From contig RQSC01000024.1 of NCBI GenBank assembly GCA_013416795.1, positions 225,982 to 289,981 of the forward strand: a DNA stretch of 64,000 nt. Direction: 5' to 3'. The position numbers and the translations under genes are program-made. Positions within the stretch are counted from its first letter, which is position 1; every line of letters starts with the position of its first letter. This document shows, piece by piece, positions 1-60,435 of this stretch. The notes below the pieces were generated by a model, which saw only the letters and a list, made by a program, of their open reading frames with translations, was not told the origin of the DNA and made no database searches. The stretch comes from Prasinococcaceae sp. CCMP 1430 (Eukaryota; Plantae; Prasinodermophyta).

Positions 1-1929
1 CTCGGCGCGCGCGCGTTCGACGCACTCGTCGGCGCCGCGGCCGCTGCGGACGCCGCGCTGCGCCCAAATGCCGCTGGCGGTGCGCCGCGCGCCTCAGAGG
101 GCTTCTCCCGCTTCGTGCGCTCGCCCTTGTGGGCGGCGCTGCACGAGTGGGCGCGCGCCCACGGCCCGGTCTTCCGCCTCGCGTTCGGACCAAAGGCCTT
201 CCTCGTCGTCTCCGACCCGGCGATGGCCAAGCACATCCTCGCGACCAACGCCAGGGCATACGACAAGGGCTTCCTTGCCGAGTTCGCGCGCGACTTCATG
301 GGCGACGGCCTCATCCCCGCAGACAACGCGACGTGGGCGCGGCGTTCGCCCGCCGTGCGTGCGGCGCTGCACGCGCGCTTCCTCGACGTCGCGCTCGGCG
401 TGCAGTGGGAGTGCGCGCGCGAGGCCGCTGCGGCGCTGCGCGCGCGCGCGAAAGCCGCAGCAGACGGAGGCGGGGAGGAGCTGGTGGTAGACCTCGAGGA
501 ATTCTACGCCACCGTTGCGCTGCGTACCGTCGCGCGGCTGCTCTTCAACGTGGATGTCGGGGTGGAGGGAGGAGGCAGCGCAGCCGCAGGCGGCGAGAAC
601 GGCATCGACGGCCAGGGCGGCCTCTCCGCGGTGCTGCGCGCTGTGACCGGCGTCATGCAAGAGGCCGAGCACCGCTCCACCTTCTTCGTAGAGTACTGGA
701 AGCTGCCCCTCGTGGCGGCGCTCGTCCCGCGCCAGAGGCGATTCCAGGAGAACCTCGCCACCCTCCGCCGTGTGCTCGGCGGGCTCGTCGACGAGGCCCT
801 CGCCGGCGACCGCGCCGAGCTTTCCGCCGAGGACCTCGCCGCGCGCGACTACTCATCGCTGCCAGACGTCAGTGTGCTGCGCTTTCTTGTCGACGTGCGC
901 GGCGAGGACGCCGGCGCCAAGCAGCTCCTCGACGACCTCATGACGCTGCTCATAGCCGGGCACGAGACCTCCGCGGCGGTGCTCACGTGGGGGACATTCC
1001 TGCTGCTGGGGGGTGGTGAGGCGGCGGGTGTTGACGGAAGCACCGAGCGCTGGTGGGAGCGCGTGCAGGCGGAGGCGGACGCCCTCGTCGACGCGGTGGA
1101 TGCGCGCGCTGCCAACACCGAACGCGGGGGTGCGGATGTGGGCGCAGACGGGGCACGGGTGCGCGCACCCTTTGGCGTCCCGCACCTTGAGGACCTCCTG
1201 CGCATGGAGGCGGCGCGGCTGTGCGTGGCCGAGACGCTGCGGCTGTACCCCCAGCCGCCGGTGCTCATCAGGCGGCCGCTCGAGGACGACGTGCTTCCGA
1301 AAGGGGGAGGCAGCGGGGGCAGGTGCGGGCGGCGCGCGTCGTCTTGCAATGCGTGCGTGCGCGTGTGTGTGTGTGTGTGTCGCACGAGCTCTCTTTCGCT
1401 CTCACCGCTGACAGCCCGGCGCTCGCGTGCACGCGCGCGCTGTTGTGCCTGCTCTCTGCGCGTGTACAGCGCCACTGGCGGCGGCTACGACCTGCCCGCG
1501 GGCACCGACATCCTCCTGTCCGCGTGGAGCCTGCAGCGCTCCGAAGAGGTGTGGGGCGCGGACGCGGCCGTCTTCGACCCCGAGCGCTGGCGCCGCGACG
1601 TGCGGGCGCGGCCAGAGCTCGGGTGGGGCGGCTACGACGCCACCGAGGGCGCCGCGCGCGGCCTCATCCCATCGGAGCGCGCGTCGGACTTCGCCTTTTT
1701 GCCCTTCGGCGGCGGCATGCGGCGGTGCGTGGGCGACCAGCTGGGCCTCTCGCAGGTGCTCCTCGCGCAGGCGGCCCTCGCGCGCGAGCTGGACGTCGAG
1801 CTGGTGGACCCGGCCGGCGTTGGCATGCGCGCGGGCGGGAGCATCCACACCGCCGCCGGCCTGATGGCACGGGTGCGCGCTCGCAGTGTGGTGCCGCCGC
1901 GAAGCCCCGCGCCCGCGGGCCCCGCGTGA
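1..1929 (+). CDS. CYP97B: Cytochrome P450, CYP97B-like carotenoid hydroxylase (5' end lies upstream of the window); intron 1323-1469
   Basis: Frame 1 is open from base 1. Motifs YDKG..A, EAEHRSTF, AGHETSAAVLTW, ETLRLYPQPPVLIRR and heme motif FLPFGGGMRRCVGDQ match the CYP97B pattern. GTGCGG...TACAG intron (147 nt, in frame) removes a TG-repeat stretch and restores GSATGGGYDLPAGTDI. Confidence 0.88.
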   Translation, partial: LGARAFDALVGAAAAADAALRPNAAGGAPRASEGFSRFVRSPLWAALHEWARAHGPVFRLAFGPKAFLVVSDPAMAKHILATNARAYDKGFLAEFARDFMGDGLIPADNATWARRSPAVRAALHARFLDVALGVQWECAREAAAALRARAKAAADGGGEELVVDLEEFYATVALRTVARLLFNVDVGVEGGGSAAAGGENGIDGQGGLSAVLRAVTGVMQEAEHRSTFFVEYWKLPLVAALVPRQRRFQENLATLRRVLGGLVDEALAGDRAELSAEDLAARDYSSLPDVSVLRFLVDVRGEDAGAKQLLDDLMTLLIAGHETSAAVLTWGTFLLLGGGEAAGVDGSTERWWERVQAEADALVDAVDARAANTERGGADVGADGARVRAPFGVPHLEDLLRMEAARLCVAETLRLYPQPPVLIRRPLEDDVLPKGGGSGGRCGRRASSCNACVRVCVCVCRTSSLSLSPLTARRSRARARCCACSLRVYSATGGGYDLPAGTDILLSAWSLQRSEEVWGADAAVFDPERWRRDVRARPELGWGGYDATEGAARGLIPSERASDFAFLPFGGGMRRCVGDQLGLSQVLLAQAALARELDVELVDPAGVGMRAGGSIHTAAGLMARVRARSVVPPRSPAPAGPA

Positions 1930-3302
1930 CTCCGCGTGACGCGTGCCCGTCCCCGCGCACCCGCCCGCGTTCCCGTTCCGTCCCGGCGCCCCGCGCACGG
2001 CCCGCGCCGGCACTCGGCAGCCCCTCATCGGAAGGCGTCCCGCCGCGGCTGCGGCTGGATCCCTGCCGGGGTTCCTCACGAACCCACCTGCGATACGCAC
2101 CTGCCTGAGTTGGGCCCATGATTGTCAATGATTCGTGGGTTGGAGGGCGGCGGCCGACGGGGTTGCTAACGAGCCTCCGATCATTCCGCCGCCTCGGCGC
2201 GGCGCTCGGCCTGCGAGGCAGCGTGGTGAGGGCGGGGGTGGAGACTGGCTGGGGATGTGACCTGAACCTGACTGATGGTGGTGGGGAGCTCGATCGAAAC
2301 GCGTGCGCGGCTCCACGTCGACGGCGCCGACGACGGCCTGACTGGCGCCCGCCCGCCAAAGGGCCGAAGTTTCGGTCGAATATTTGGAAGGCCCATCGGA
2401 TCGTCGGTCCGAGGCGCAAGTGTCGGGTCTCGGCATTTTCGCATTTCGGGGCGTTGGTTGGCTGGTTGGCGTTGGTTGGCGGTCGGATCGACGGGCGATT
2501 TGATCGGGCGTCCGGAAAATTTAGAGCTCGGGGCGGCGGGCGCAGTGTGGCAGGCGCACACAAACCCGCGCTTGGCGAAGCTCGCTCCGAAGCCAGCCCC
2601 CCACGTGCCGGCGAGGCGGCGTCGGCGGATGATGGATCGGCTCAGCGGCGCGCTGATGGGCGCGACGCGAGCGTCGCCCTCGTGGGAAATCTGATGAGTC
2701 TGGGTGCTGTCGTGTCAGGCGGGACGGGCGTCGCGTCGGGGGCGTCCGAGGCCGGGCGCGCTCCCTCCCCCCCGTGTTCTGAATGGTTCTCGCGGTCGTG
2801 CCCGCCGGCCCGTGGCGCTGCGCCGAGGCTCCGACCGGGCGAGATCATCCGGGGCCGCTCGAGGGGGGAAGCGCCGGCGCGCACTTCGCCGCCGCTCCCC
2901 GCCCCGCCCCCGTTCGAAGATCGAACCCGTTTCCATCGGAGTCTCCCGGTCTTTCGCACGGGTGCGACCCCGCATCACCCCGGACAGACCGGGGTTCCCA
3001 AGGGGCACGGAACGAGCCCCACCGCGGAAATTCGGAACGGCGGCGCGAAGGGGCGCGCTGAGTGGCGCACTGATTCGGAGGTCGGATGCATTCATTCGCG
3101 CCATCACATCACGCAATGCGAACAGCTGCGCGCAGGCGGGGGGCGCGCCGGCGGCTGGGGGTCGCCACTTGGAGCAGCGCGGCGGCGGGATCGGTCGCGC
3201 TGCCAGCGCCGTCGCGGGCGCGGCGCGCTACGCACTGGCGGCGGGCGACGAGGTGTGACCGGGATGGCGCGGTGAGTGTGACCTCTCGGCGTGTAACCCG
3301 CA

Positions 3303-6035
3303 ATGGCGGAGGGCGGCGCCGAGGGCGCCGGCGCTGCGGGGGGCGGTGCGCCAGCTTCGCAGGCGGCGGCCGCCGAGACGCAGGTGGATACTGCTGCCTG
3401 CGATGAGGTGCAGCCGCCCATGCCGCCGCCGCCTGCCGCGACGGGCGAGTCGCGGCCATCGAAGCCACGACGGTGCCGCCGACAGCAGTCGGAGCACATC
3501 GCGGCGCAGCTCGACGAGCACAGGCAGCTGCAAAGAGATCTCGTGGTCTTGCATCGGCAGCGGTCGCGGCGACGGCTCGCGAGCGAGGGCGGCGGCGGCA
3601 GTGAGAGCGGCGGCAGCGACAGCGGTCATAGCGGCAGCAGCGGCAGCAGCAGCAGCGGAGCGGAGAGCGACAGCAGCGATAGCTCTGCGCCGGGTACGCA
3701 CACCCCTCATGCGTCGACCAGTGACGACGAAGAAGAGGCGGCGAGCGCGCCAAGCATCGTCATCGGTCACGAGGTCCCACGGGAGCTTGGCGAGGTGGTT
3801 GTTCGACGCAAAGCGCGGTTGAGCGAGCGAGCGCGCAGCAGCGGTAGCAGCAGCTGCAGCGTTGGCACCAGCGGCGAGGCCAGCGAGGGGAGCGAGAGCG
3901 GCGAGGCCGGCAATGCGACCACGCCGACCGGGCACGCCGGCGCCGACGTGCGAGACGACGGCGGTGAGGATGGGCATGAGACCGCATGCGACGACGACGA
4001 CCAGGCCGAGACTGAGGAAGCCAAGAACAAGGCGCCCCGCAAAGCGAGCCAGCGGGGCATCGAGCTTTACTTCAAAGTCTGGACGACCTTTGCCGTGGTC
4101 GCCGCCGTTCTGAACGGCCTCAACGTCAAGTGGACGCACCTGAGTGCATGGTCCATTCCGCTCGCGGTCATCCTCTTCATCGTGCAGTGCGCGCTGCAGT
4201 GGTCCGCTTGCGAAATCCCGCTGATCTCCTTTGCCACGCTGCTCGTCACGCCCCCGGAGGATGAGAAAGCCGACGGCAGCAAGCTCACGGTCGCCATCAA
4301 CTACAACCTGCTGGCCAGTGACAAGCTCGAGGTCGAAGCCTGCTTGGGCAACGCATACGAGGCGTACATAGGCAATCTTGCACCCATCGTTTTGAGCATA
4401 TTGGTGAGCGCGACGGGCGACCCGGACCTCAAGAACTACGAGATGGAGTACCGGGACAGGTGTCGCGAACAGATACGCGAGCTGGTGATGACAGAGGGCG
4501 CGGCGGTGTGCGCAGGCGGCGAGGCGGCGGAGGCGGTGGACGTCGGGCGGCGCAAGCGGCTGTACGAGCCCGAGCTCGCCGCGGGCGCTGCGCTCGAGGA
4601 CATCGCCGAGCGCGCGGCGCTGGACTTCATGGTGGTGCAGCGCGTGACGCGCGTGCTGCGCAAGTGCGGACAATACCAGGATTTGATGATACTGTCCGAG
4701 CGCTCCAACGTGACGTACACCTACTGCGACCCGAAGCAGTACAACGAGGCTGCACGTGAGGGCGGCGGGCCCATGTTTCATCCCAGCGCGGACGTGAGCC
4801 GGGTTGAGGGCCGCCGCATCGACTACGTTCTCGTGTTGGACGGAGACACGGGCGTGGTGAAGGACTCGCTGGCCGAGCTCATGTCGGTTGCTGCCGCCAA
4901 CCCCGACCGCGCCATTGTGCAGCCTGCAATCAAGCTCTTCGCCAACCCAGACCAGCCGCTCTTCATGCACATTGACGCGATGCGGCAGGACCTGTGCGAG
5001 CCCATCTCGGCGGCGCTGACCACTCTGCTCGGGCGCTCGGGCTTCTTCGGAAAGGGGCTCATCAACAGCCGCCTGTACATAGACAAGCTGCTGGGAACTC
5101 CCGACAAGCTCATCGAGCAGGTGCCCATAGACGTCCTGTCGCACGATACGTTCGAGGCCGCGGCCACCGGCCCGTTGTACGTCAAGGGCGTGCATCTCCT
5201 GGAGGAACCTTGTGGTAACTACACCACCTGGGACATTCGCGAGTGCAGATGGAACCGAGGCGAGCTCGTGCTGTCGCATTACTTCTTCCCAGAGACCGCA
5301 GGCGTGTGGTTCACGCGGGCGATGAACTACGTGCGGCCGCTCATGGGCAAGAAGAAGCCGCCCGTGTTGCACCTGCGCACGGAGACGCACCTCGATGAGC
5401 CAGGCGCGTACATCGCGCACTCGGCGCTGCGGCAGATGCTGCTGAAGCCCTCGCTGCTGCTGTACATCGTGCTGCAAACGATGGTGCCCAATCTGCTGTG
5501 GTACCCATGGCAACCCATCTGCATCGTCATGTTTATGCTGCTCGTGCTACCCAAGTTCGCAATCGCGCGCTGGGGCAACCTGCATTTGCTCGTCTTGGAC
5601 ACCATTTGCTCGATCTTGCAGTTCACGCCGGAGCCCATCATGGGCACGCTGCGCGGCTACAACTCGTGCTACGCTCACATCACGGGCGTCTCGGGATGGG
5701 TGCCGCAATTCAAGGTGGAGCAGGAGTTTGCCAGCTGCAACGCACTGCTCGCGAGCTTTCGGTTCCTCTGGAAGGTGTGCTTGGTCGGCACGGTCAGCTC
5801 GGTGTGCGTCATTATCTTCCTCCCCAGCTCATGGCTGATGCTAATCACGCTCGGGTCGACCGCCTTGCTGCCGTTCTACTGCGCAATCACGGCCGTCTCG
5901 CCTGACGACTATGCGGCAATGGGGCAGCAGGCGGCTGAGCTCCCCGGTCGCATGGTCCAGCTGTTCATCGCAGGGGTCAAGCGGCTCGCGAAGACGTGTT
6001 ACAGTGGTGGCTCCGATGTGGAGCTCGCCGCATGA
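3303..6035 (+). CDS. Membrane GT2 glycosyltransferase, OpgH/MdoH (glucans biosynthesis glucosyltransferase H)-like, with Ser/acidic N-terminal extension; intronless
   Basis: 910-aa ORF. RKCG, YVLVLDGD, AIVQP, FFGKGLI, VLSHDTFEAA and LEEPCGNYTTWDIRECRWNRGEL parallel MdoH RKSG, YMVVLDAD, GIIQS, YWGHNAII, ILSHDFVEAA and [23 protein letters not shown]. Hydrophobic segments flank the catalytic domain. Confidence 0.8.
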   Translation: MAEGGAEGAGAAGGGAPASQAAAAETQVDTAACDEVQPPMPPPPAATGESRPSKPRRCRRQQSEHIAAQLDEHRQLQRDLVVLHRQRSRRRLASEGGGGSESGGSDSGHSGSSGSSSSGAESDSSDSSAPGTHTPHASTSDDEEEAASAPSIVIGHEVPRELGEVVVRRKARLSERARSSGSSSCSVGTSGEASEGSESGEAGNATTPTGHAGADVRDDGGEDGHETACDDDDQAETEEAKNKAPRKASQRGIELYFKVWTTFAVVAAVLNGLNVKWTHLSAWSIPLAVILFIVQCALQWSACEIPLISFATLLVTPPEDEKADGSKLTVAINYNLLASDKLEVEACLGNAYEAYIGNLAPIVLSILVSATGDPDLKNYEMEYRDRCREQIRELVMTEGAAVCAGGEAAEAVDVGRRKRLYEPELAAGAALEDIAERAALDFMVVQRVTRVLRKCGQYQDLMILSERSNVTYTYCDPKQYNEAAREGGGPMFHPSADVSRVEGRRIDYVLVLDGDTGVVKDSLAELMSVAAANPDRAIVQPAIKLFANPDQPLFMHIDAMRQDLCEPISAALTTLLGRSGFFGKGLINSRLYIDKLLGTPDKLIEQVPIDVLSHDTFEAAATGPLYVKGVHLLEEPCGNYTTWDIRECRWNRGELVLSHYFFPETAGVWFTRAMNYVRPLMGKKKPPVLHLRTETHLDEPGAYIAHSALRQMLLKPSLLLYIVLQTMVPNLLWYPWQPICIVMFMLLVLPKFAIARWGNLHLLVLDTICSILQFTPEPIMGTLRGYNSCYAHITGVSGWVPQFKVEQEFASCNALLASFRFLWKVCLVGTVSSVCVIIFLPSSWLMLITLGSTALLPFYCAITAVSPDDYAAMGQQAAELPGRMVQLFIAGVKRLAKTCYSGGSDVELAA

Positions 6036-6309
6036 CTCGGGCTCAAAACTAGCCATGCGCACCACGCAAGGCTCCAAAACTCCAAACTACCACTCCGCAC
6101 GGCGGACGTGCGTCCTAATACATCACGCCGTAGCCCACATTGAGCACGGCGGTGACACGAAACAATGCGCTCCCTAAAACACTAATAACGGCACCACGTA
6201 TACGGTGCCGCTGTAAGAGGAAAGACATTGGCGGATCTTCTCGATGAGCCAGAGCCGACGCAACGCAGACGTGCGCAGCATGTGGGCCCCAGGACCTTGC
6301 TCCCCGCTG

Positions 6310-6872
6310 CTAGTCGATCAGCGCAGCCACCGCGAACGTGCAAACGAGCGATCCCACGCAACGATCGAAAGCGGCCATAAGGACGACCACGGGCGGCCTA
6401 TGCTCCCAAAGGGCGCCATCCGAGGCGGACAGCACACAGAGCATCAGACACGCCGCCAACGGGGCCCACAGCTGCGCACGTGTGAAGTCAGCGGTGACAC
6501 GACGAGCACTCGCTAATCATGGCACATCGCGACAACGCCACCCACCGGCGGCAGGTGACATGGCGCCGTGCTTTGAGGAGCGGCGCATACGGGCCATGTC
6601 GCATGACGCACCTCTGCGCTGCCGGGCCCTGTGCGACCACCAAAAAGCATGATCAGGGTGGCAGCTGCAGCCGCCTGAAGGAGCGCCGACCCGATTGAGC
6701 CTGCAAAGCACAGCCAGGTCGGATACACGTTCCTCCACGCCGCCGGCTTGCGTCCGCCCTTGTCCTTGTTCATCTCCTCTTCTAACGTCGTGGACACGCA
6801 CTTCGTGTAGTAAAATGCCTGCAGCGCGAAGCGCGCCGCCGCCGCGACCGCGACGGCCGCCTCCCAGCGCAT
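6310..6872 (-). CDS. Small multi-pass membrane protein, DUF1761-like (exons 6872-6612, 6471-6310; about 140 aa)
   Basis: GAG|GTGCGT donor and GCGCAG| acceptor (140-nt intron) give MRWEAAVAVAAAARFALQAFYY...FAGSIGSALLQA...LWEHRPPVVVLMAAFDRCVGSLVCTFAVAALID*, with four hydrophobic stretches and a WE.RP motif like DUF1761. Confidence 0.55.
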
Positions 6873-7271
6873 CGCGTGACGCGAAGGACGGCACGAAAAG
6901 CCCCGGTCCTGACGCCCTACACCGCCCCGTGGCCCTCCGTTCGTCTGTTCGGCACGCGCGGTGCACACGCTCGCACCGGTGTACCCCTGGCGCAGCAGGC
7001 GCGCGGCGGTGCGGGCGAACAGTTTGGCACAGCTGGCGCTGCCCGCACTCCTTTTTTTTTTAATGGGCGTGACTTCAATTCGACCAATTTTATCCGAAAA
7101 AGGGGGCTGCAGTACACAAGCACGCCACGCATGCCATCAATCGCCTCGTGCGCGCCGCAGCACTGCCAGCCTCCATCGGGCGCTGCTAGGCTCGCGTGGG
7201 TCTGCGCCCGGTTTTGCGAGCGTTCGTTCGTTCGTTCCCCATCGCTCCGGCATCGGATCCACGACCCCTCC

Positions 7272-9832
7272 TCACTCGGGCCCATCCCCGTGCGTGCTGG
7301 CGGCACTGCTCGAGAAAGCCGACTGCACGAGGCGGAGTCTGCGTTGACTAGTGCTCTGCTCCTCCGCGTGCGGACCGAGACCCTCGCTTGAGGTCGCCGA
7401 CTGCACGCGGCGCAAGCTCGAAGTCTTGGTGATCACGCGCGATACCGCCTTGCTGCGTGCCGCCTTTCGCGCGTCGATCGCCTCCTGCGCGCAGGATTGC
7501 ACGACGGGGAATTGGGCGAGCAGCGGCGCGACCGCATCGCGGTGCAGCGTGAGCACCTCGCAGAGCTCGGTCGCAACCACTGTGGCCGTTCTTCTTTCTG
7601 AGAAGAGGCACGCGTTCTCCCCGAAGTTGCTTCCTTGGCCAAGCGTGGCCACCACAACACCGCCGTCCAGGACGATGGATACTTGGCCCTTGACGATGAA
7701 GAACATTTCGTCACCGATGTCACCTTTGCTCACGACCTGGTCGCCGGCCAAGATGAGCTGGGGTGTGACGCATCGAACGAGCGCCTTCACAAAGGAGAGG
7801 GTTTGCTGCTCGTCTCGCGCAAATGATGCGGACACAAATCCAACCTTCAGCAAGAACTTCGCGTACAAATGCATCGACACCTCGGTCTGCATGAATGACG
7901 GGAGGTCGCCGAGAGTGTCTTCCATGCTGCTTGACTGGAACCCTCCCAGCCGCTCGAACAGAGTGTTGTAGTAGGTGAAGAGCCGGTGACGCAGTTTCGC
8001 TGGCAGCTGGTTCGTGTGGCAAAAGCGCGTGACCTCATCCATGCGATTCCGATACCGGATGGCGCGCACGTCGCTGGCCTCGGTCAGCTGGCCCACAGCA
8101 TTCACAAGCTGCGCGAAGAGGAAGAGGCCGAGCACAGAGACGAGAAAGGTGAAAACGACTTCGAGCGTCGTCACCGGGGTCGAAACGTTGCCGCTCGTCA
8201 TCGCACTCCACGCCCACCAGAGCGCGCTCACGTACGCCGCCAAGGGGCCGTGGGATGCCTCAGTGATCCCATAGAACTCTTGGTACTGCCAGCGCTCCAC
8301 TGACGCGAGGAACAGAAATGCGCACGCCACAATATGCGTAAGCACAAAGCCGTAGTATGCAAGGGACAGAAAGTAGGTCGCGACAGGCCCGAGTGTCCGT
8401 TCCGCGAGGTGTTGCGTCCCGCGCGCCATCTTGCCAAGGTAGTGAGAGGACAGGAGGAGCCGGGGGATGCGCGCCAGAGCGCGCGTCTGCGACGCCGCCA
8501 GGCCGGGCATGGCGGGGTTCAGGCGCGCGAGGTTCAGCAGCAGCTGCCATGGCGTACAGGCCACCAGCCGCTGGGCCACCCCCCGGTACCACCACCAGGC
8601 CATGCCCCCATTCCCGGACGCCTCCCGCTCGCGTCGGTGCCACGCCTCGAAGTCGACGTTGTGCTCCGTCCGGTTTGCAGTCGCCGACGCAAGAGCGAGC
8701 TCCTCGATGTCCACCGCAACGGCGAGATAGCGCACGAGGTGAATCACAGTAAGAGTGTCGGCCAGCGCATCCACCCAGCCCAACGTCACGAGCAGCTCGT
8801 CCTCAAGCTCGAACGCGCGGAGCATGGGTCCGATGGCGGCCCCAGTCGTCACGACCAGCCAGTTGTATAGGAGCACAGCGCCATTGAGGAATGCCCACCA
8901 TGTATCATTGGCGGCGGCCGTACGGCGCAGCGCCACCACCGCATCATGCTCGTGCCACCTCTTGGCCGGGTGACCGGCCGCGAGCATCTGCGCGGCGCGT
9001 GACATGCCTATCAGCGCGGCAACGGCTTTCAGCCTGCCGCTGAGCGTGCGCCAGCGAGCCCTCGCCACCGCCTGGCGGCGCGCCTTGCGCGTTCCGATTT
9101 CATCGCTGTCCAGCTGGCGCGCGCGCGCGACGAACGAAGAGAATCTAGCGGCTGTCCCGCGCCTCATGTTTGTCTGCTTGCGCTGTAGAAGCCCCAGACC
9201 ATCGAGCGCTTCTGACGTCTGGGGAGAAAAGGAGGGACACGCATGGCAGAGGGAGTCGTCGGTGGTTGCGTGAGTGCCACACTCGCAGTCGACGCGCCAG
9301 CAACAATGCTCTGCATTGCACGCACACGCACCTTCTTCGCTTCGCTGGCCCACGCGCGTGCACCCGACCTGCGGCCAAGCATTCTTTGGGCCATGCGCGC
9401 CACGGAGAAGACCGAGCTGGTACCACCGGCCGGTGCGGAGTCATGTTCGTCCGTGGCAGCGTCTGCATCTGCGTTGCCACCAAAATTGCTGGTGGTGGCA
9501 CTGGTCGCAGTTCCCTGCGTGGGCTGCTCGCGCGCTTGCAAGGGCGTGGCCGCCTGCCTGCCGTTGCTGCGAACGCGCCCCGTGGCTTGGCTTTGAGGTG
9601 TGCCGCTGCCGGGAGCAGATACAGGCACCTCAGTGTTTGCTGCGGCTGTTGAGGCGCCCATGGGAGCGGCTGCGCGTTGCGCTAGCCGCTGCCACGGCCG
9701 GGACGGGGGCGCCTTAGTAGGAGGCGATGGGCGCGGTGACGATGGCGTTGGCGGTGCCGACGACCTGAGCCCGTTGATGCGCTTGCGAACCCATCGCTGC
9801 AATCTGCTCGCCGCAGAGACGTCAGAGCTCAT
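7272..9832 (-). CDS. Cyclic-nucleotide-binding-domain cation channel (KCNH/HCN/CNG superfamily); intron 9331-9219
   Basis: Six-TM region, pore helix SALWWAWSAMTSGNVSTP, C-linker (YRNRMDEVTRFCHTNQLPAKLRHRL...LPSFMQTEV) and CNBD (GDIGDEMFFI, FGE, RRTATV). AAG|GTGCGT...CCCCAG intron joins the two ORFs in phase 0. Confidence 0.85.
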
Positions 9833-10198: not shown

Positions 10199-11641
10199 TT
10201 AAGTAGCCTCGCCCCCTCGCTGCTGCTCCAGCGGCGATCGCGCAGCCGAGCGCTTATGGTGCCGAAAGCTGAGGTACGCCGCGAGGCCCCAGCCGAGGCC
10301 GGCGGGGAGGAAGAGCAAGCACATGATGGACATGGTGCTTCGCCAGTCGTGGAGCCTGTCCTGCAGTACACCCGCGAGCGGGGGCATCGGCACGTCGCCG
10401 AGCAGATGGATTGCGTTCACGCATAGCGACATGGCCAGCCCCCTGAGCTCGGTGGGCACGATCCACATTTGCGCAGCATTGACGGCCGCTTGGGGCAGCA
10501 TAAGGGCCACGAAGGCCACGGAGAACAAAGACAAGAATCCGACGACGCTATCGCATGCAAATCCGCCAAGCAGCACAAGACCGCCCACGACCGTCGAGCA
10601 CCCGCACAGCGCGAACGCACGGTGCGCCGTACCACCCAGCTTGTCGAGGAGGAGTCCGCCGCTGAGGGTCCCCACGATGCCGCTGACGACTGTCGCACCC
10701 CCGATGGCGATGTTGGCATCGTCACCGAGGGAGCTGTACGCCTCGCGCGCCGCAGTCGGCCCCCACACCGACAGCGTGCCGAGCGCTCCCGTATATAGCC
10801 CGGAGGAGACAATGCTGGCTACGTACGGAGCGATGAGCAGCAGTGTACGCACGTCTGCGGCGAAGCTGGAGCAACCCACGCGGCTGCCCTCGTGCGATGG
10901 CTCGAGGCGTCTTCTACCGAGGGGAATGGGCCGCGACAGCGCGCAGAAAAGCACGAGCGGCAGGCCAATCATGGCCTCGACGCCGAAAACCCACCGCCAG
11001 CTGCCAGTGAGCCCCTCGACCACGCCGCCGAACACGTAGCCGAGCGCCGTGCCCGCCGCAATCCAAACGTAGAACAGCCCAAGCCAAATGGTCTTGCGCC
11101 GGCGCGGCGCGTAGTCGTCAATGAAAGGGGCCGCGAGGCAGACGATTGATGCTTCGCCCGCGCCGACGATGCAGCGGCAAGCGACCAGCTGTGCATATGA
11201 GCGCGCAATGGAGCATCCGGCGACGGCGAGGACCCACAGGCCGAGCCCACCCGCGATGCAGTGCAGCGCCGACCGCGCGTGCGCGAGCCGGGCGAAGACG
11301 GGAGAGCTCACCATCAGCCCGACCATGAACGCCGACTGAAGCATGCCCGCCTGAGCGCTGCTCAGGCCGAACTCGCCAATGATACCTTCGTCAGCGCCAG
11401 CGCCGCCATCGCCCTCTTTCCTTCCGAGGACGGCGGTCGAGGACAAAGTGCCTCTGTCCAGGTAGATGAGCGCGTTCAGCACGCAGAGCAGAGCGGTGAG
11501 TCGCCCGGGCGTTGCCCACGGGTGCCCCGCGAGCTGCGCCGCTGCCGACTCGGACGCTACGCCACTGCCCGCCTTGCTCCCACTGCTCGGAGGCAAGTGC
11601 GACAGCAGCGCATCAGACTCCATCCCCGCTGGCTCCGCCAT
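10199..11641 (-). CDS. MFS transporter, Spinster (SPNS)-like
   Basis: NALIYLDRG, QAGMLQSAFMVG, CRCIVGAGEAS, APFIDDYAP, GTALGY, WRWVF, IHLLGDVP motifs; about 12 hydrophobic segments; first in-frame ATG at 11641. Confidence 0.85.
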   Translation of the reverse strand: MAEPAGMESDALLSHLPPSSGSKAGSGVASESAAAQLAGHPWATPGRLTALLCVLNALIYLDRGTLSSTAVLGRKEGDGGAGADEGIIGEFGLSSAQAGMLQSAFMVGLMVSSPVFARLAHARSALHCIAGGLGLWVLAVAGCSIARSYAQLVACRCIVGAGEASIVCLAAPFIDDYAPRRRKTIWLGLFYVWIAAGTALGYVFGGVVEGLTGSWRWVFGVEAMIGLPLVLFCALSRPIPLGRRRLEPSHEGSRVGCSSFAADVRTLLLIAPYVASIVSSGLYTGALGTLSVWGPTAAREAYSSLGDDANIAIGGATVVSGIVGTLSGGLLLDKLGGTAHRAFALCGCSTVVGGLVLLGGFACDSVVGFLSLFSVAFVALMLPQAAVNAAQMWIVPTELRGLAMSLCVNAIHLLGDVPMPPLAGVLQDRLHDWRSTMSIMCLLFLPAGLGWGLAAYLSFRHHKRSAARSPLEQQRGGEAT

Positions 11642-12107
11642 GAACGCCCGCCCGGCCGCACGATCCGGCCCCCTCTCCTCCGCCACGGCCGAGCGCCCTC
11701 ACCCGGCTGCGGCTGCGGCGCGGCGCGGCGCGGCGCTCGCGCGTTGCGCAGCGCCACGCACCGCGCGCCGCGGCAGGCGGGGGCGCCTCTGATACGGCAG
11801 GCGGGCGCGCACGAGGGCGGGGACGGACCCCCGCACTGGCAACCCGCCCACCCCTTTCCCCCTTCCCACCGCACGGCCCCCGGCGCGCGCTGTGTCGCGC
11901 CCGCACGACGGGCGCCGCGTCAGCAGCGGGCGCGTTTTCCTCACACGTTCATTTTGATATACTATCAGAACAAGAGCATGACCGCGTTGAAACTTGAAAT
12001 TCGAGTTCAGCACCCCAGGTGTGTGCAGGTTGAGAAAAAAAGGCACGCCGAGGGCGCCACATGTGCGCAAGGCGGCGGCCGCCACGGCGCCCAGTCAGGC
12101 TGCGCAC

Positions 12108-51914: not shown

Positions 51915-54925
<3,011 letters not shown>

Positions 54926-55000: not shown

Positions 55001-58000
55001 TCAATGGAGCCCCTTCTCTAGCTCTTCGAGCCGCCGCCTGAGCGCGGCATTCTCCTCGCGCAGCGCCGCGACATCACCGCTGTCGGGCGCAGCCACGGAG
55101 GCCCTCTTTTGGGCAGGCTGAGCATGGGCGGGCTCATCAGAGCCGCCATCGCAGGGGCGCGCGCGCTTGCGCTCGCCATCTCTCAAACCGTCGCCAGGCC
55201 TGGCCCTCTCGGTCCCGTTACTATCGGTCACCTCCAGTCGCACCAGTCCGGGCAGTTCGTCAGTACCAGGCACCTCGCCCAGGGCAGCCGCATGTACGAT
55301 GCTCTCCAAGCTGCCAAGGAGCGTCCTGACGGGGATCGGCTTCGCGCACAAGAAGTCTACGCCCTTGCGCGCGTACGTGCGTGCGTCGTCGGGCATTGAG
55401 TTGGCCGTCACGAGCACAACCGGCAGACGGCGAGGGGGGTCAAAACTGCTGACGTTGAGTACTTCTTGGTGTGCCCGAGCCTCCGCCTCGACTGCCCGCA
55501 GCTTCTGCGTCACGTCTGTGCCGTACAGCCCGGGCATGACCTCGTCCAGCAAGGCGATGTCGAATGATGACGTGCGAAGCAGCTTCAGAGCGTCTTTGCC
55601 GTTCATGGCGGTCTCTATGTGTGGCGAAGGACTTCCCTGACTCTTGGCCGCCTTGCGCAATGCCATCTGCAGAATTCGCACGTTGGTGTGTTCGTCGTCG
55701 CAGATTAGCACGCGCAAGGCTTCCTTTGGCACTGCGCCGGCCTTCCCGCTCGCAGCACCATCCGTCGACTGTTCACCGCGCGCGGGCGCAATGACGTTCG
55801 CCGGCGCGGAGGCTCCCTCAGGTGTGCTCAATTCCGGTGGTGCGCGCGCCGAGGCCGACGGCGCCTGCGCGCGCGCACTTGCGCCACTGACGATTGACTT
55901 CGCGGTGCTTTCGCTGGCCGCTGCGCGCGCATTTGCAGTGCCGTCGCCGCCGCGAATTGTGTGCACGGCCGACTCCATGCGGCACTCGGAGGGCACGCCT
56001 GTTGCCATGAACTCAAACAGACCGCGCGGAATTGGCGATGAGGGCCTCTCAGAGCGGACAAGTGCATCGCCACGAGCGCTAGGGGCAATCCTGAAGGGAA
56101 CGGTGCACGTGAAGATCGAGCCCGCGCCCAGCACGCTCTCGACGGAGATATCGCCACCCAAGCAGCGCGCGATCGTGCGCGCGTAGTACAAGCCTAGGCC
56201 AGTCGACCCAAACTTGGAAACGTTGCTCGAGGCAAGTTCGAAACGCTTGAAGAGCTTCTCACAGTCCTCAGGAGCAATGCCCACGCCAGTGTCGACCACG
56301 GCAATTGACACGAGCACGCGGCTGCCACCACCATCACGGCTATTCGAATCGTTGCTCCCTCCAGCGATGTCCAAGCCTTGCGTGTCTGCAAGGCTCAGAT
56401 CTCCAAACGCAGGCCCTGCGACTTGGCCCTGGCCACGGTCACCAGAGGCACCGCCGCTGCGGTGCCGAGCGCTGGGCGTCCCAGCCGGCGCGTCGTGAGG
56501 CAGCGTCGCTCGCGTGCACTCGGCATGGAGTTCAATTTGCCCCGCCGGCGTGTACTTCACGGCATTCCACACTATGTTCGAGATCATCTGCGTCAGGCGG
56601 ACGTTGTCGCCCACAACGTGGCGAAGTCCGCGCAGCCCCCCCACGTCAAGACCCAGCCGTAGGCCCTTGGCGCTTGCTGCGGGGCGCACTCCCTGGAGGC
56701 AGTCCGAAATTGCAGCTTGCAGGTCGAAGGCCTGCGAGTTCAGCTTGAACTTGCCTTGCTCTATGGCCGTCGCGTCCAACACGTCGTCCACCACACGCCG
56801 CAGTTGCCTAGTGCAGGACTCAGTTGTCTGCAAAAGCTCGCCCATCTCTTCGCCGAGCATCGAGGAGCCCGAACGCATGAACTCGGTGGCGGCCACGATT
56901 CCGTTGAGAGGGTTGCGGATCTCGTGGCAGAGGAAGGAGATGGTGTTGGACTTTGCGCGTACTGCGGCCTCGGCAGCCATGCGCACCGCCTCTGCCTTCT
57001 CAAGAGCGCGTAGCATCGACTGGTCCTGCAGGTAGATGAGGCAACCGCCCTCACCTGGAGCGCCATCTCTCTCGGCGGCGGGGCGCACGCTCAGAACACA
57101 CTCCAGCGCGCGCCCGCGGCACATCACGGTGGTCCGCACGTCGGCTTCAGCGAGCGCGCCCGAGGCAGCCTGCGAGCTTCCTTCTGCGCGCGTGGCACGA
57201 ATGAGCGCTAGCTCCAGAGGGAAGAGCTGCTTGGTAGCCACCTGCATGCAACTTGCACCGCCCGCGCCTGTCCCTATCACCTCCTCAAGGAAAAGCTTGC
57301 CCACAACCTCGCGTGATGCTATCCCGCCTGTGACGACCTCCATCGCGTGATTCCAGAGAGTCACGCGCAGGTTGCGATCCAGGCAGAGGACTGGCGACTG
57401 CATGTTTTCGAGGAATCCAGGCTGCTCAGTCGAGGCAATGGCCGCGGAAATCTCCTTGGCGAGGACGACTGCGCTCGCTTGAGCGGGGGTGTTGCGCGCG
57501 GAGCGCACACCGGCAGGCGCTGCCACTACATCGCCGATGAGGCGCAGAATGCAACTTTCGCCAGATGCGGTCGTGCCCATGATGGCGAAGGCAACCCCGT
57601 GCGCCTCAGCGGTACCAACTCCCTCACCGTCGGATGCACTGTCGAGCGTGCTGCTCAGCGCTGCAGCCAGGGGTGACGCTGGTCCACCCTCCAGGCACGA
57701 GACCAGGGGCGTCCCGATGACTGCGTCAGCGTATAACCCTGTGCTCTGCTGTAGCCACCGATTCCACGTGCAGATCTCGCCGTTCGCGCTGACAGTCATG
57801 CATGCCATCGGGGCTCGATCGATGAGAAGGGAAAGCTCCGCTGCGACTTTCTCCAGCTCGCCCATGTCGCTCAATCTCGAGCGGTTGAGCACCGAAGCAA
57901 TGCCTGCGCGCAGCAACGATCCTGTGGCCGCTTCGACTGCGTCACGCAAGACGGCCACTAGCGCACCCGCACCACGCGCGGCAATACGGGGCCAAAGCTC

Positions 58001-60088: not shown

Positions 60089-60435
60089 CCCCCGGCCCCC
60101 CGCCGACTGCCACGCAGCGCCGCCGCCGCCGCGCGGATAAATATGCCCTTCGCGCTCGCGCGCGCGTGGCGCATAAAAAACGCCAAAAAGTGACTCCGCG
60201 CAATCCACGTTGGACCGAAAAAGCACACAGCATACCTTGGTACCATCCGGATGGTAAAGGAGACCACCGCCCTCGCCTCGTTACAACCCCCATCCGAAAT
60301 TCCCGCCGTGGTTTTCCGCGGTGGGCGTCAAACGCAATTCGAAACGCGCCCCCAGCGGCGCGCGTATCTCACGCAACGCGTCGTCGAAATTGGTAAACCG
60401 CCGTGGTACGTACTACGTAACGTACGGTGCACTCT

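What the first reader, a model, noticed from the sequence alone, without database searches (positions are those of the whole stretch)
3303..6035. Bacterial OpgH/MdoH-type glucan synthase encoded in an algal nuclear genome
Seen: an intronless 910-aa GT2 retaining MdoH-like catalytic signatures (RKCG, VLDGD, SHD, RECRW in place of the QxxRW of cellulose synthases). Known: OpgH makes the beta-1,2-glucan backbone of osmoregulated periplasmic glucans in proteobacteria and is not a standard green-plant enzyme. Inference: horizontally or endosymbiotically acquired synthase making an undescribed glucan (wall, mucilage or osmolyte), with a new eukaryotic Ser/acidic N-terminal arm that could be phospho-regulated.
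Basis: partly seen in the sequence, partly recalled or inferred. Interest (0 to 1): 0.75.

Follow-up and report, generated by a model that had tools for sequence, protein, structure and literature searches.

The report
OpgH-like glycan synthase, eukaryote-virus family
This green alga expresses an intact membrane sugar-polymer synthase that is only distantly like the bacterial OpgH enzyme and belongs to a so far undescribed, highly conserved family shared by diatom-type algae, dinoflagellates, giant viruses, molluscs, ribbon worms and acorn worms, so it is not a simple bacterial import.

Summary
ORF 3303-6035 (+) encodes 910 aa with RKCG, VLDGD, SHD and RECRW at residues 453, 511, 613 and 646. 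RNA contigs tile it without joints, and it is linked to a spliced neighbour gene.

The protein is homologous to OpgH, but only at superfamily level:
- hhalign gives 97% probability to E. coli OpgH.
- Predicted-fold TM-score to OpgH clusters is 0.66-0.71.
- It fails every curated OpgH and GT2 cut-off.

It belongs to a compact family (112 clusters at E<=1e-30 among 1.84 billion). I found no prokaryotic member within the limits of the two searches. Members occur in:
- diatom-type nuclear contigs (54-60% identity);
- molluscs, a nemertean and hemichordates (40-47%);
- dinoflagellates;
- marine giant viruses.

Codon usage is host-like (GC3 0.85), so recent bacterial transfer is not supported.

Most likely it is a processive beta-glycan synthase, plausibly beta-1,2-glucan. 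The product is inferred only. The position expected to hold the first UDP-binding Asp is Ala or Val in all 140 members (tentative mapping). I found no paper describing this family.

The parts
3246..3302 (+). 5' untranslated leader; RNA contig cover begins at 3246
   Evidence: X15 record 3 spans 3246-3568. There are stop codons in frame just upstream of the ATG.
3303..6035 (+). Complete intronless coding sequence, 910 aa plus stop
   Evidence: RNA contigs tile it without joints. Strain variants of 907 and 910 aa exist.
3303..4040 (+). N-terminal low-complexity arm, aa 1-246 (Ser 38, Ala 36, Gly 32, Glu 26, Asp 17 of the first 250). No hydrophobic signal; predicted cytosolic.
   Evidence: It is not alignable to relatives, but arms of the same composition occur across the clade.
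4056..4244 (+). Two N-terminal membrane helices, aa about 252-314, preceded by a Lys/Arg-rich stretch
   Evidence: hydropathy scan; model helices H2-24 and H35-64 in alignment numbering, which is protein numbering minus 250
4290..5342 (+). Cytosolic GT-A catalytic domain with interface helices, aa about 330-680
   Evidence: model at pLDDT 90.7. Matches: Cgs Z 20-24, BcsA Z 16-17; OpgH clusters TM 0.66-0.71. tblastn with E. coli OpgH hits 4668-5162.
4407..4415 (+). S369-A370-T371, at the place where OpgH has S-D-S and Cgs has S-D527. Position 370 is Ala 128, Val 11, Ile 1 and never Asp in 140 members.
   Evidence: The mapping rests on motif order and spacing only, not on a significant alignment.
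4659..4679 (+). R453-K-C-G-Q-Y-Q459 motif (OpgH has R-K-S-G-N-I-D); K-C-G-Q-Y-Q is invariant in 140 members
4839..4847 (+). D513-G-D515, the DxD metal and nucleotide-sugar binding motif
   Evidence: It aligns with the Cgs D624 region and with OpgH D-A-D.
5139..5147 (+). S613-H614-D615; D615 aligns with the catalytic base (Cgs D739, BcsA D343)
5238..5252 (+). R646-E-C-R649-W650, the counterpart of QxxRW (Cgs R773)
5397..6002 (+). C-terminal membrane domain of about six helices plus a final long helix, aa about 699-900. It aligns with the C-terminal membrane part of OpgH.
2338..3245 (.). Spacer between the P450 gene and the synthase with no RNA cover. It holds most of the chance ORF 2118-3275.
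6310..6872 (-). Convergent neighbour gene encoding a 140-aa small membrane protein, with one 140-nt GT..AG intron at 6472-6611. It is the spliced gene that proves nuclear linkage.

Best explanation
Shown: a single-copy (in this window), intronless, transcribed nuclear gene of a deep-branching green alga encodes an integral-membrane GT-A glycosyltransferase. It has a disordered Ser/acidic cytosolic arm, two membrane helices, a cytosolic catalytic domain with intact DxD, SHD (catalytic base) and R..RW motifs, and a C-terminal bundle of about six membrane helices. It is a remote homologue of the two known beta-1,2-glucan synthases, OpgH and the membrane-plus-GT module of Cgs. It belongs to a distinct, strongly conserved family confined, as far as sampled, to marine eukaryotes and giant viruses. 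Inferred: it works as a processive inverting synthase. It takes an activated sugar (most likely UDP-glucose) at the cytosolic face and builds a beta-linked glycan, most plausibly a beta-1,2-glucan. The glycan is either threaded through the enzyme's own membrane domain, as proposed for OpgH, or released and exported by a separate transporter, as with Cgs. Relatives fused to ABC or MFS exporters hint at the second route. Inferred: the patchy distribution and the high cross-kingdom identity point to gene transfer among marine eukaryotes, possibly through giant viruses, rather than to a recent bacterial donor. My estimates: family placement and enzyme class about 0.9; beta-1,2-glucan as product about 0.4.
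For: Gene reality and linkage. Homology to OpgH: hhalign 97.4%, E 1.6e-11 over 332 columns; family profile against E. coli OpgH 41.9 bits; tblastn E 4e-6; MdoH models hit by 26 of 27 members. Homology to Cgs: profile E 4e-5; Foldseek E 3e-16, TM 0.60; Z 20-24 against 16-17 for BcsA. Fold match to bacterial OpgH clusters over the whole length, TM 0.66-0.71. Catalytic residues invariant in 140 members. Compact separate family: 532 hits at E<=1e-3 and 112 at E<=1e-30 among 1.84 billion representatives. Only one weak hit by signature peptides across 185,579 prokaryotic species genomes. Distribution: molluscs and hemichordates, nemertean and dinoflagellates, giant-virus contigs, diatom-type nuclear contigs. 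Trees. Host is a green alga. Host-like GC3 of 0.85. Link to beta-1,2-glucan in remote relatives: an OpgH-like gene overlapping a GH144-type beta-1,2-glucanase gene and a cluster of GT plus PF10091 fusions. Exporter fusions. Cyclic beta-1,2-glucans are reported from a green microalga (PMC11842490).
Against: No biochemical data exist for any member. Sequence similarity to OpgH starts only at the DxD motif. Every curated OpgH, GT2 and Pfam threshold is missed by the window's protein. The position expected to hold the first UDP-coordinating Asp is Ala or Val throughout the family (tentative mapping), so the donor or its binding mode may differ. No OpgG, GH144 or other beta-1,2-glucan partner lies in the window. 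The fused ABC part is a generic exporter, not specifically the glucan exporter type. The root of the family tree and hence the direction of transfers are unknown, and the sister relation to the animal clade has only 88/98 support. Most close relatives are unnamed metagenomic proteins.
Confidence: 0.62

Rival explanations
1. One reading: a bona fide bacterial OpgH/MdoH gene acquired recently by horizontal or endosymbiotic transfer, making osmoregulated-periplasmic-glucan-type backbone. This would resemble the OpgH gene that Verticillium and Fusarium took from Rhizobiales.
For: Shared catalytic motifs and homology to OpgH. The gene is intronless. There is precedent for true OpgH transfer into fungi (PMC3145793).
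Against: The window's protein scores 13 bits against MdoH equivalog cut-offs of 419-1037. No close prokaryotic relative appeared in an exhaustive profile search or in a signature-peptide scan of 185,579 species genomes. The nearest kin are eukaryotic nuclear genes and animals. GC3 of 0.85 equals that of host genes. The OpgH N-terminal region and OpgG partner are absent.
Confidence: 0.06
2. Same enzyme class but a different product: a non-glucan or differently linked polymer, an oligosaccharide, or a glycoconjugate. The family would have diverged in donor or acceptor specificity from OpgH and Cgs.
For: The first Asp position is Ala or Val family-wide, and the motif K-C-G-Q-Y-Q is family-specific and invariant. 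Identity to OpgH is only about 25%, and only from the DxD motif onward. Some relatives carry a second, ordinary GT2 domain, which suggests a two-sugar product (P0186). Exporter fusions fit small exported products. As far as I know, beta-1,2-glucan has not been reported from molluscs or hemichordates.
Against: Both closest characterised homologues make beta-1,2-glucan. The SHD..E and R..RW signatures are shared specifically with them. Remote relatives are paired or fused with GH144-type beta-1,2-glucan enzymes.
Confidence: 0.28
3. The algal gene is a giant-virus gene captured by the host, either as an endogenous viral element or as an old virus-to-host transfer.
For: Full-length family members lie on giant-virus contigs beside the major capsid, topoisomerase II and DVNP genes, and on mimivirid-like contigs. 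The patchy host range fits viral shuttling.
Against: The viral sequences form their own long-branched clade (100/100), only 27-30% identical to the window's protein. The neighbours are cellular genes: P450, cNMP-binding protein, MFS transporter and a spliced small membrane protein gene. GC is 63-72% against 23-25% in the viral contigs, and GC3 is host-like. No viral hallmark gene was seen among the window's ORFs that I scanned.
Confidence: 0.1
4. Assembly artefact: a contaminant or chimeric segment that is not part of the alga's nuclear genome.
For: None beyond the gene's unusual affinities and its lack of introns.
Against: The stretch is held at 0.99 of sampled words in 14 runs from 12 studies. 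A 16.3-kb DNA contig spans it and the neighbours. RNA contigs join its 3' part to the spliced neighbour. Seawater metatranscriptome contigs match at about 99%. Composition is host-like.
Confidence: 0.01

Closest known systems
OpgH / MdoH (GT2), the bacterial synthase of the linear beta-1,2-glucan backbone of osmoregulated periplasmic glucans
   Same: It is homologous from the DxD motif to the C-terminal membrane helices. It shares R-K-x-G, ANP..GIIQ, LSHD..EAA and R..RW..G. The predicted whole-length fold matches OpgH clusters at TM 0.66-0.71. The catalytic domain lies between N- and C-terminal membrane helices.
   Different: Identity is about 25% and scores are tens of bits against equivalog cut-offs of 419-1037. 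The N-terminal half is not detectably similar by sequence. S-A-T stands where OpgH has S-D-S (tentative mapping). Here the region upstream of the first membrane helix is a low-complexity arm. No OpgG is nearby. The hosts are eukaryotes and giant viruses rather than bacteria.
[quoted passage not shown]
   Same: It is the best solved-structure match over the membrane plus GT module: Z 20-24 with 495-537 aligned residues and Foldseek E 3e-16. It is the only PDB hit of the family profile. The DxD, SHD and RW residues correspond to D624, D739 and R773.
   Different: The NTD, GH189 cyclase and GH94 phosphorylase domains are absent; this protein ends after its membrane helices. The self-priming Tyr694 loop of Cgs falls in an insertion relative to the family. 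The model predicts a regular 24-residue helix there, whereas Cgs has an unwound loop and no export channel.
Bacterial cellulose synthase BcsA and other membrane-integrated processive GT2 synthases (hyaluronan, chitin and plant cellulose synthases)
   Same: The overall GT-A plus membrane-channel architecture is shared, with interface helices and an RW motif.
   Different: The matches are weaker (TM 0.44-0.48, Z 16-17). SHD replaces TED, R-E-x-R-W replaces Q-x-x-R-W, and there is no PilZ domain.
Fungal OpgH homologues of Verticillium, Fusarium oxysporum and Metarhizium (Klosterman et al. 2011, PMC3145793)
   Same: They are eukaryotic nuclear genes related to OpgH that lack wide eukaryotic distribution.
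   Different: The paper describes them as closely related to Rhizobiales OpgH and as a recent bacterial transfer. The present family has no close bacterial kin, and no fungus appears among the named hits I saw.

Membership tests
OpgH / MdoH (NCBIfam equivalogs NF003955-NF003963) | Whole-protein score at or above the curated equivalog cut-off | tested here: not met
   The window's protein scores 13.4 bits, E 0.012, against a cut-off of 1037. The best family member reaches E 3e-13, still tens of bits against cut-offs of 328-1037.
OpgH / MdoH | Catalytic signatures DxD, LSHD..EAA and R..RW..G, with homology extending into the C-terminal membrane helices | tested here: met
   hhalign 97.4%, E 1.6e-11, 332 columns, OpgH 329-704. 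The residues are invariant in 140 members.
OpgH / MdoH | First nucleotide-binding Asp (L-S-D-S in E. coli OpgH) | tested here: inconclusive
   The family has S-A/V-T at the matching place by motif order and spacing, 35 against 33 residues after the beta-1 motif. No significant alignment covers this region.
OpgH / MdoH | Whole-length fold like OpgH | tested here: met
   ESM Atlas OpgH/MdoH clusters match at TM 0.66-0.71 with 480-530 aligned residues spanning model residues 1-625. Both sides are predicted models.
OpgH / MdoH | Works with periplasmic OpgG, usually as an adjacent opgGH operon | tested here: not met
   tblastn with E. coli OpgG finds nothing in the 64-kb window. The rest of the genome was not searchable.
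OpgH / MdoH | Synthesises beta-1,2-glucan from UDP-glucose | not testable with these tools
   This needs an enzyme assay and linkage analysis.
CAZy GT2 as represented by Pfam PF13632 and PF00535 | Pfam gathering score reached | tested here: not met
   PF13632 scores 14.9 bits against 27 on the trimmed protein, and nothing hits the full protein. PF13632 appears in 4 of 27 relatives when scanned at E<=1, best E 5.6e-07.
Membrane-integrated processive GT-A synthases (fold class) | GT-A domain docked under a membrane helix bundle, with interface helices and an RW motif | tested here: met
   Model pLDDT 90.7, pTM 0.87. Matches include Cgs, BcsA, HAS, CesA and Chs.
[quoted passage not shown] | Multidomain protein of about 2,800 aa with a GH189 cyclase and a GH94 phosphorylase after the GT module | tested here: not met
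   The protein ends at residue 910, after the membrane helices. Only Cgs residues 402-1017 are matched.
[quoted passage not shown] | Self-priming tyrosine (Y694) on an unwound IF1 loop | tested here: not met
   Y694 lies in an insertion relative to the family profile. The model has a continuous helix at alignment positions 303-326. The Cgs features come from PMC10901819.
Eukaryote plus giant-virus OpgH-like family (defined here by alignment A1) | Full-length match with invariant K-C-G-Q-Y-Q, Q-P, G-K, S-H-D and R-E-x-R-W | tested here: met
   54-60% identity to diatom-type members and 40-47% to animal members over 94% of the core. Clade support is 100/100.

The most novel reading that the evidence does not exclude
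This family is the missing eukaryotic beta-1,2-glucan synthase. It would be a lineage separate from bacterial OpgH and Cgs that has been passed among marine algae, dinoflagellates, giant viruses and some marine invertebrates (molluscs, nemerteans, hemichordates). It would account for beta-1,2-glucans such as those isolated from Chlorella. In giant viruses it would remodel the infected cell's surface or osmolyte pool.
Probability: 0.3. Interest if true: 0.8.

Novelty: new variant of a known kind. Interest (0 to 1): 0.62.

Why it matters
Beta-1,2-glucans are regarded as rare, essentially bacterial polymers with roles in osmoadaptation, symbiosis and virulence. As far as I know, no eukaryotic synthase has been assigned for them, although a green microalga has been reported to contain cyclic beta-1,2-glucans (PMC11842490).

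This family is a concrete, testable candidate. It keeps 40-60% identity across a green alga, diatom-type algae and animals, and it is carried by marine giant viruses. It is also a striking case of patchy, probably horizontal, distribution among eukaryotes.

In practical terms, the label 'glucans biosynthesis glucosyltransferase H-like' carried by some mollusc proteins overstates what is known, and the 'bacterial import' reading should not be propagated. If the product proves different, the family-wide loss of the first nucleotide-binding Asp would be of interest for donor recognition in GT-A enzymes.

Tried and rejected
- Single-sequence Pfam, NCBIfam and PDB searches of the window's protein gave nothing usable. 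Only profiles and the fold gave signal.
- The in-frame upstream ORF 2118-3275 as an extra exon or readthrough: rejected. It is junk sequence with three stops and no RNA cover.
- Synteny or conserved partner genes: the neighbours of the GT in the diatom-type contigs, the viral contigs and L015 have no counterpart in the window.
- The fused ABC exporter as a specific relative of the NdvA/ChvA glucan exporter: rejected. MRP and MsbA models score higher.
- The MFS gene at 10199-11686 as a functional partner: no evidence beyond proximity, and it is not of the same MFS subfamily as the fused one.
- Aligning the N-terminal half of the GT domain to OpgH by hhalign recovered only the R-K-x-G motif, without significance. 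The first-Asp substitution therefore stays tentative.
- Literature searches for a description of the eukaryotic family found none. The library is incomplete, so this is not proof of absence.
- Species name: the tools hide names for the window's own proteins. I could show only a deep green-lineage host. Prasinoderma coloniale comes from an earlier scan note.
Full report
**1. Observation**

ORF 3303-6035 (+) starts with ATG and encodes 910 aa.

The first 246 residues are a Ser/Ala/Gly/Glu/Asp-rich arm without a signal-like hydrophobic core. Then come two membrane helices, a soluble domain, and a C-terminal set of membrane helices.

The ORF just upstream (2118-3275) is in the same frame. It translates to Arg/Gly-rich junk with three stops before the ATG, has no Pfam hit, and has no RNA cover over 2338-3245. 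It is a chance ORF in 70% GC DNA.

**2. Is it a real, expressed, nuclear gene?**

- The locus is held at 0.99 of sampled words in 14 runs from 12 studies.
- Laid on 1500-7400, two runs behave as RNA. They carry a 140-nt joint (6471 to 6612) whose ends, CT..AC on the + strand, are GT..AG on the minus strand. This is an intron of a convergent neighbour gene.
- A DNA run carries that stretch unspliced on a 16.3-kb contig spanning 3163-7400.
- The RNA contigs tile the synthase ORF from 3246 to beyond the stop with no joint. The gene is therefore transcribed, intronless, and physically joined to a spliced gene.
- Short seawater metatranscriptome contigs match at about 99%.
- Flanking genes are cellular: a P450 upstream, a cNMP-binding protein and an MFS transporter downstream, and further on a CDC5 splicing factor, a phytochrome-histidine-kinase-receiver protein and a mitochondrial carrier.
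- The CDC5 protein has only Viridiplantae among its named relatives, at 40-45% with no preference for chlorophytes or streptophytes. This fits a deep-branching green alga and agrees with an earlier scan note naming Prasinoderma coloniale. I could not confirm the species name.
- GC3 of the conserved core is 0.85, within the 0.70-0.87 range of neighbouring genes. Its lower total GC comes from GC2 of 0.42, as expected for a membrane protein.
- Contamination or chimerism is excluded for practical purposes. Recent arrival from a compositionally different donor is unlikely.

**3. What family is it?**

Single-sequence searches fail. There is no Pfam or NCBIfam family at E<=0.01, only a faint PF13632 signal (14.9 bits against 27), and no PDB hit.

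The word-indexed search found a large family:
- a 99% identical strain variant;
- unnamed proteins at 54-60% identity;
- many mollusc (bivalve, gastropod, cephalopod) and hemichordate proteins at 40-47% identity over 94% of the core.

Later look-ups added a nemertean, several dinoflagellates, and multidomain forms.

A 27-sequence alignment (A1) gave these results:
- **Curated families:** 26 of 27 members hit only MdoH/OpgH models in NCBIfam, best E 3e-13, at tens of bits against equivalog cut-offs of 328-1037.
- **E. coli OpgH:** hhalign gives 97.4% probability, E 1.6e-11, over 332 columns covering OpgH residues 329-704, including the C-terminal membrane helices. Plain tblastn with E. coli OpgH also finds window 4668-5162 at E 4e-6.

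The AlphaFold model is confident (pLDDT 90.7, pTM 0.87).
- **Solved structures by fold:** it matches Cgs best (Foldseek E 3e-16, TM 0.60; Z 20-24 over 495-537 residues). BcsA follows (TM 0.44-0.48, Z 16-17), then hyaluronan, cellulose and chitin synthases.
- **ESM Atlas models:** it matches a mostly molluscan cluster at TM 0.87 and bacterial OpgH/MdoH clusters at 0.66-0.71 over the whole length.

The OpgH-like reading of the motifs is therefore right at superfamily level, but every membership threshold for OpgH or GT2 models is missed.

**4. How separate is it from bacterial enzymes?**

An exhaustive profile search of 1.84 billion cluster representatives found only 532 proteins at E<=1e-3 and 112 at E<=1e-30. 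I would expect the many bacterial OpgH clusters to have swelled that list had they scored, so they appear to lie below significance.

A scan of one genome for each of 185,579 prokaryotic species with the family's signature peptides returned a single weak relative, 25% identical over 173 residues. This scan sees only exact signature patterns.

The full-length relatives at 400-490 bits that sit on long contigs are not bacterial. They lie beside an NCLDV major capsid gene, an intein-bearing topoisomerase II and DVNP. Others lie on mimivirid-like contigs with HSP70, NAD-ligase and SNF2-RING genes. Giant-virus MAGs in IMG/VR also carry it. These contigs have 23-25% GC.

**5. Phylogeny**

I built a quick tree of 67 non-redundant full-length members and a careful LG+C20 tree of 42.
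- The window's protein is the earliest branch of a 9-member clade (100/100).
- An animal clade of molluscs plus hemichordates is well supported (100/99).
- These two clades together get 88/98, which is suggestive but not firm.
- Outside them lie protist clades, including the transporter fusions and dinoflagellates, and a long-branched giant-virus clade (100/100).
- The root is not known.

One member of the window's clade lies on a contig whose TCP-1 alpha chaperonin is 70-74% identical to diatom proteins. That contig and a related one carry ordinary eukaryotic genes such as PPR, UCH and GT34.

The nearest relatives of this green-algal gene are thus nuclear genes of an unrelated algal lineage. 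The synthase is 54-60% identical to them, whereas the alga's own CDC5 is only about 44% identical to other green plants. Together with the absence of land plants and named chlorophytes among the hits, this argues for transfer among marine eukaryotes. Direction and vector are open. Giant viruses are a plausible vehicle, but the sampled viral sequences are not the donors.

**6. Catalytic anatomy**

In 140 full-length members the following are invariant or nearly so: K-C-G-Q-Y-Q (454-459), D513 and D515, Q540-P541, G583-K584, S613-H614-D615, and R646-E647-x-R649-W650.

By alignment to Cgs, these correspond to the DxD (D624), the catalytic base (D739) and the RW arginine (R773) described in PMC10901819. 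This pattern indicates an active enzyme under strong constraint.

Two departures stand out.
- **First Asp.** At the place where OpgH reads L-S-D-S and Cgs V-S-D527 (the first UDP-coordinating Asp), the family reads V-S-A-T. Position 370 is Ala 128, Val 11, Ile 1, and never Asp. The mapping rests on motif order, spacing (35 against 33 residues after the beta-1 N-Y-N / C-N-E motif) and the predicted strand end, not on a significant alignment. I treat it as tentative.
- **Priming loop.** The Cgs self-priming tyrosine loop (Y694) falls in an insertion relative to the family. The model predicts a regular helix there. Cgs-style protein priming is therefore unlikely.

**7. Function**

Shown: the enzyme class, its topology, intact catalytic residues, and expression. 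The product is inferred.

Both characterised homologues make beta-1,2-glucan. A remote prokaryotic-type relative (P0280) overlaps a downstream gene that matches GH144 endo-beta-1,2-glucanase (PDB 5gzh, E 6e-34). One bacterial cluster with the same fold has members that carry that domain (PF10091 in 34% of members). Cyclic beta-1,2-glucans have been isolated from a green microalga (Suarez 2008, cited in PMC11842490).

Several protist members are fused in one ORF to a half-size ABC exporter or to an efflux-type MFS transporter. One contig has tandem synthase units followed by an ABC ATPase. This suggests that export of the product can depend on a separate transporter, as for Cgs. The ABC part is generic, not specifically NdvA-like.

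I therefore favour a processive beta-glycan synthase, with beta-1,2-glucan as the product at about 0.4. A different sugar or linkage is the main rival.

The N-terminal arm is transcribed, varies by a 3-residue indel between strains, and is matched in composition but not sequence by arms of about 70-430 aa throughout the clade. Regulation by phosphorylation is possible but untested.

**8. Comparison with what is known, and novelty**

The fungal OpgH genes of Verticillium, Fusarium and Metarhizium are close to Rhizobiales OpgH and are a true recent bacterial transfer (PMC3145793). This family is different.

I found no paper describing it in the held library. Some mollusc entries carry the name 'glucans biosynthesis glucosyltransferase H-like'.

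I rate it a new variant of a known kind: a eukaryote plus giant-virus branch of the OpgH/Cgs-type synthases with its own signature, architecture and fusions.

Noticed in passing
window 6310-6872 (-), intron 6472-6611: A small convergent gene for a 140-aa membrane protein, with one 140-nt GT..AG intron and a weak DUF1761 match (E 4e-4, below threshold). Its RNA contig has the highest depth figure on the stretch in one RNA run (544). Its transcript abuts or overlaps the 3' end of the synthase transcript, since one RNA contig spans both.
   Followed up: partly
L002/L003 10001-11803; L004/L005 10001-11950; L006-L008: Marine giant-virus contigs (capsid, intein-bearing topoisomerase II, DVNP; or HSP70, NAD-ligase, SNF2-RING) encode full-length members of this synthase family. 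L002/L003 also carry a separate ordinary GT2 gene nearby.
   Followed up: partly
P0078, P0025, P0109, P0186, P0160; L013 1-11930: Protist relatives occur as single-ORF fusions: synthase plus ABC half-transporter, MFS plus synthase, an extra N-terminal GT2 plus synthase, and synthase plus a formin FH2 domain. One 12-kb contig shows tandem synthase units followed by an ABC ATPase. Proteins of 2,200-3,300 aa hold two or three synthase units.
   Followed up: partly
P0019, P0021, P0031, P0036 (Sinanodonta) and other molluscs, P0170 (Tubulanus), P0106/P0110/P0111 (hemichordates): The family is expanded in molluscs. In one bivalve the locus tags run nearly consecutively, which suggests a tandem array. 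It is also present in a nemertean and three hemichordates on chromosome-scale contigs. No vertebrate or arthropod appeared among the named hits I saw.
   Followed up: no
L015 547-3722: A short metagenomic contig carries an OpgH-like gene overlapping a GH144-type endo-beta-1,2-glucanase homologue on the same strand. It looks like a two-gene counterpart of the GT and cyclase parts of Cgs.
   Followed up: partly
window 55001-60226 (-): A long ORF with PAS-GAF-PHY, histidine kinase and receiver domains. As far as I recall, this is the phytochrome architecture known from prasinophyte algae.
   Followed up: no
window 52679-54925 (+): The CDC5/Cef1 ORF as listed starts after the Myb domains that all relatives have (Myb_Cef only, 748 aa, against relatives of 800 aa or more with PF00249). 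The N-terminal Myb exon or exons probably lie upstream across an intron.
   Followed up: no
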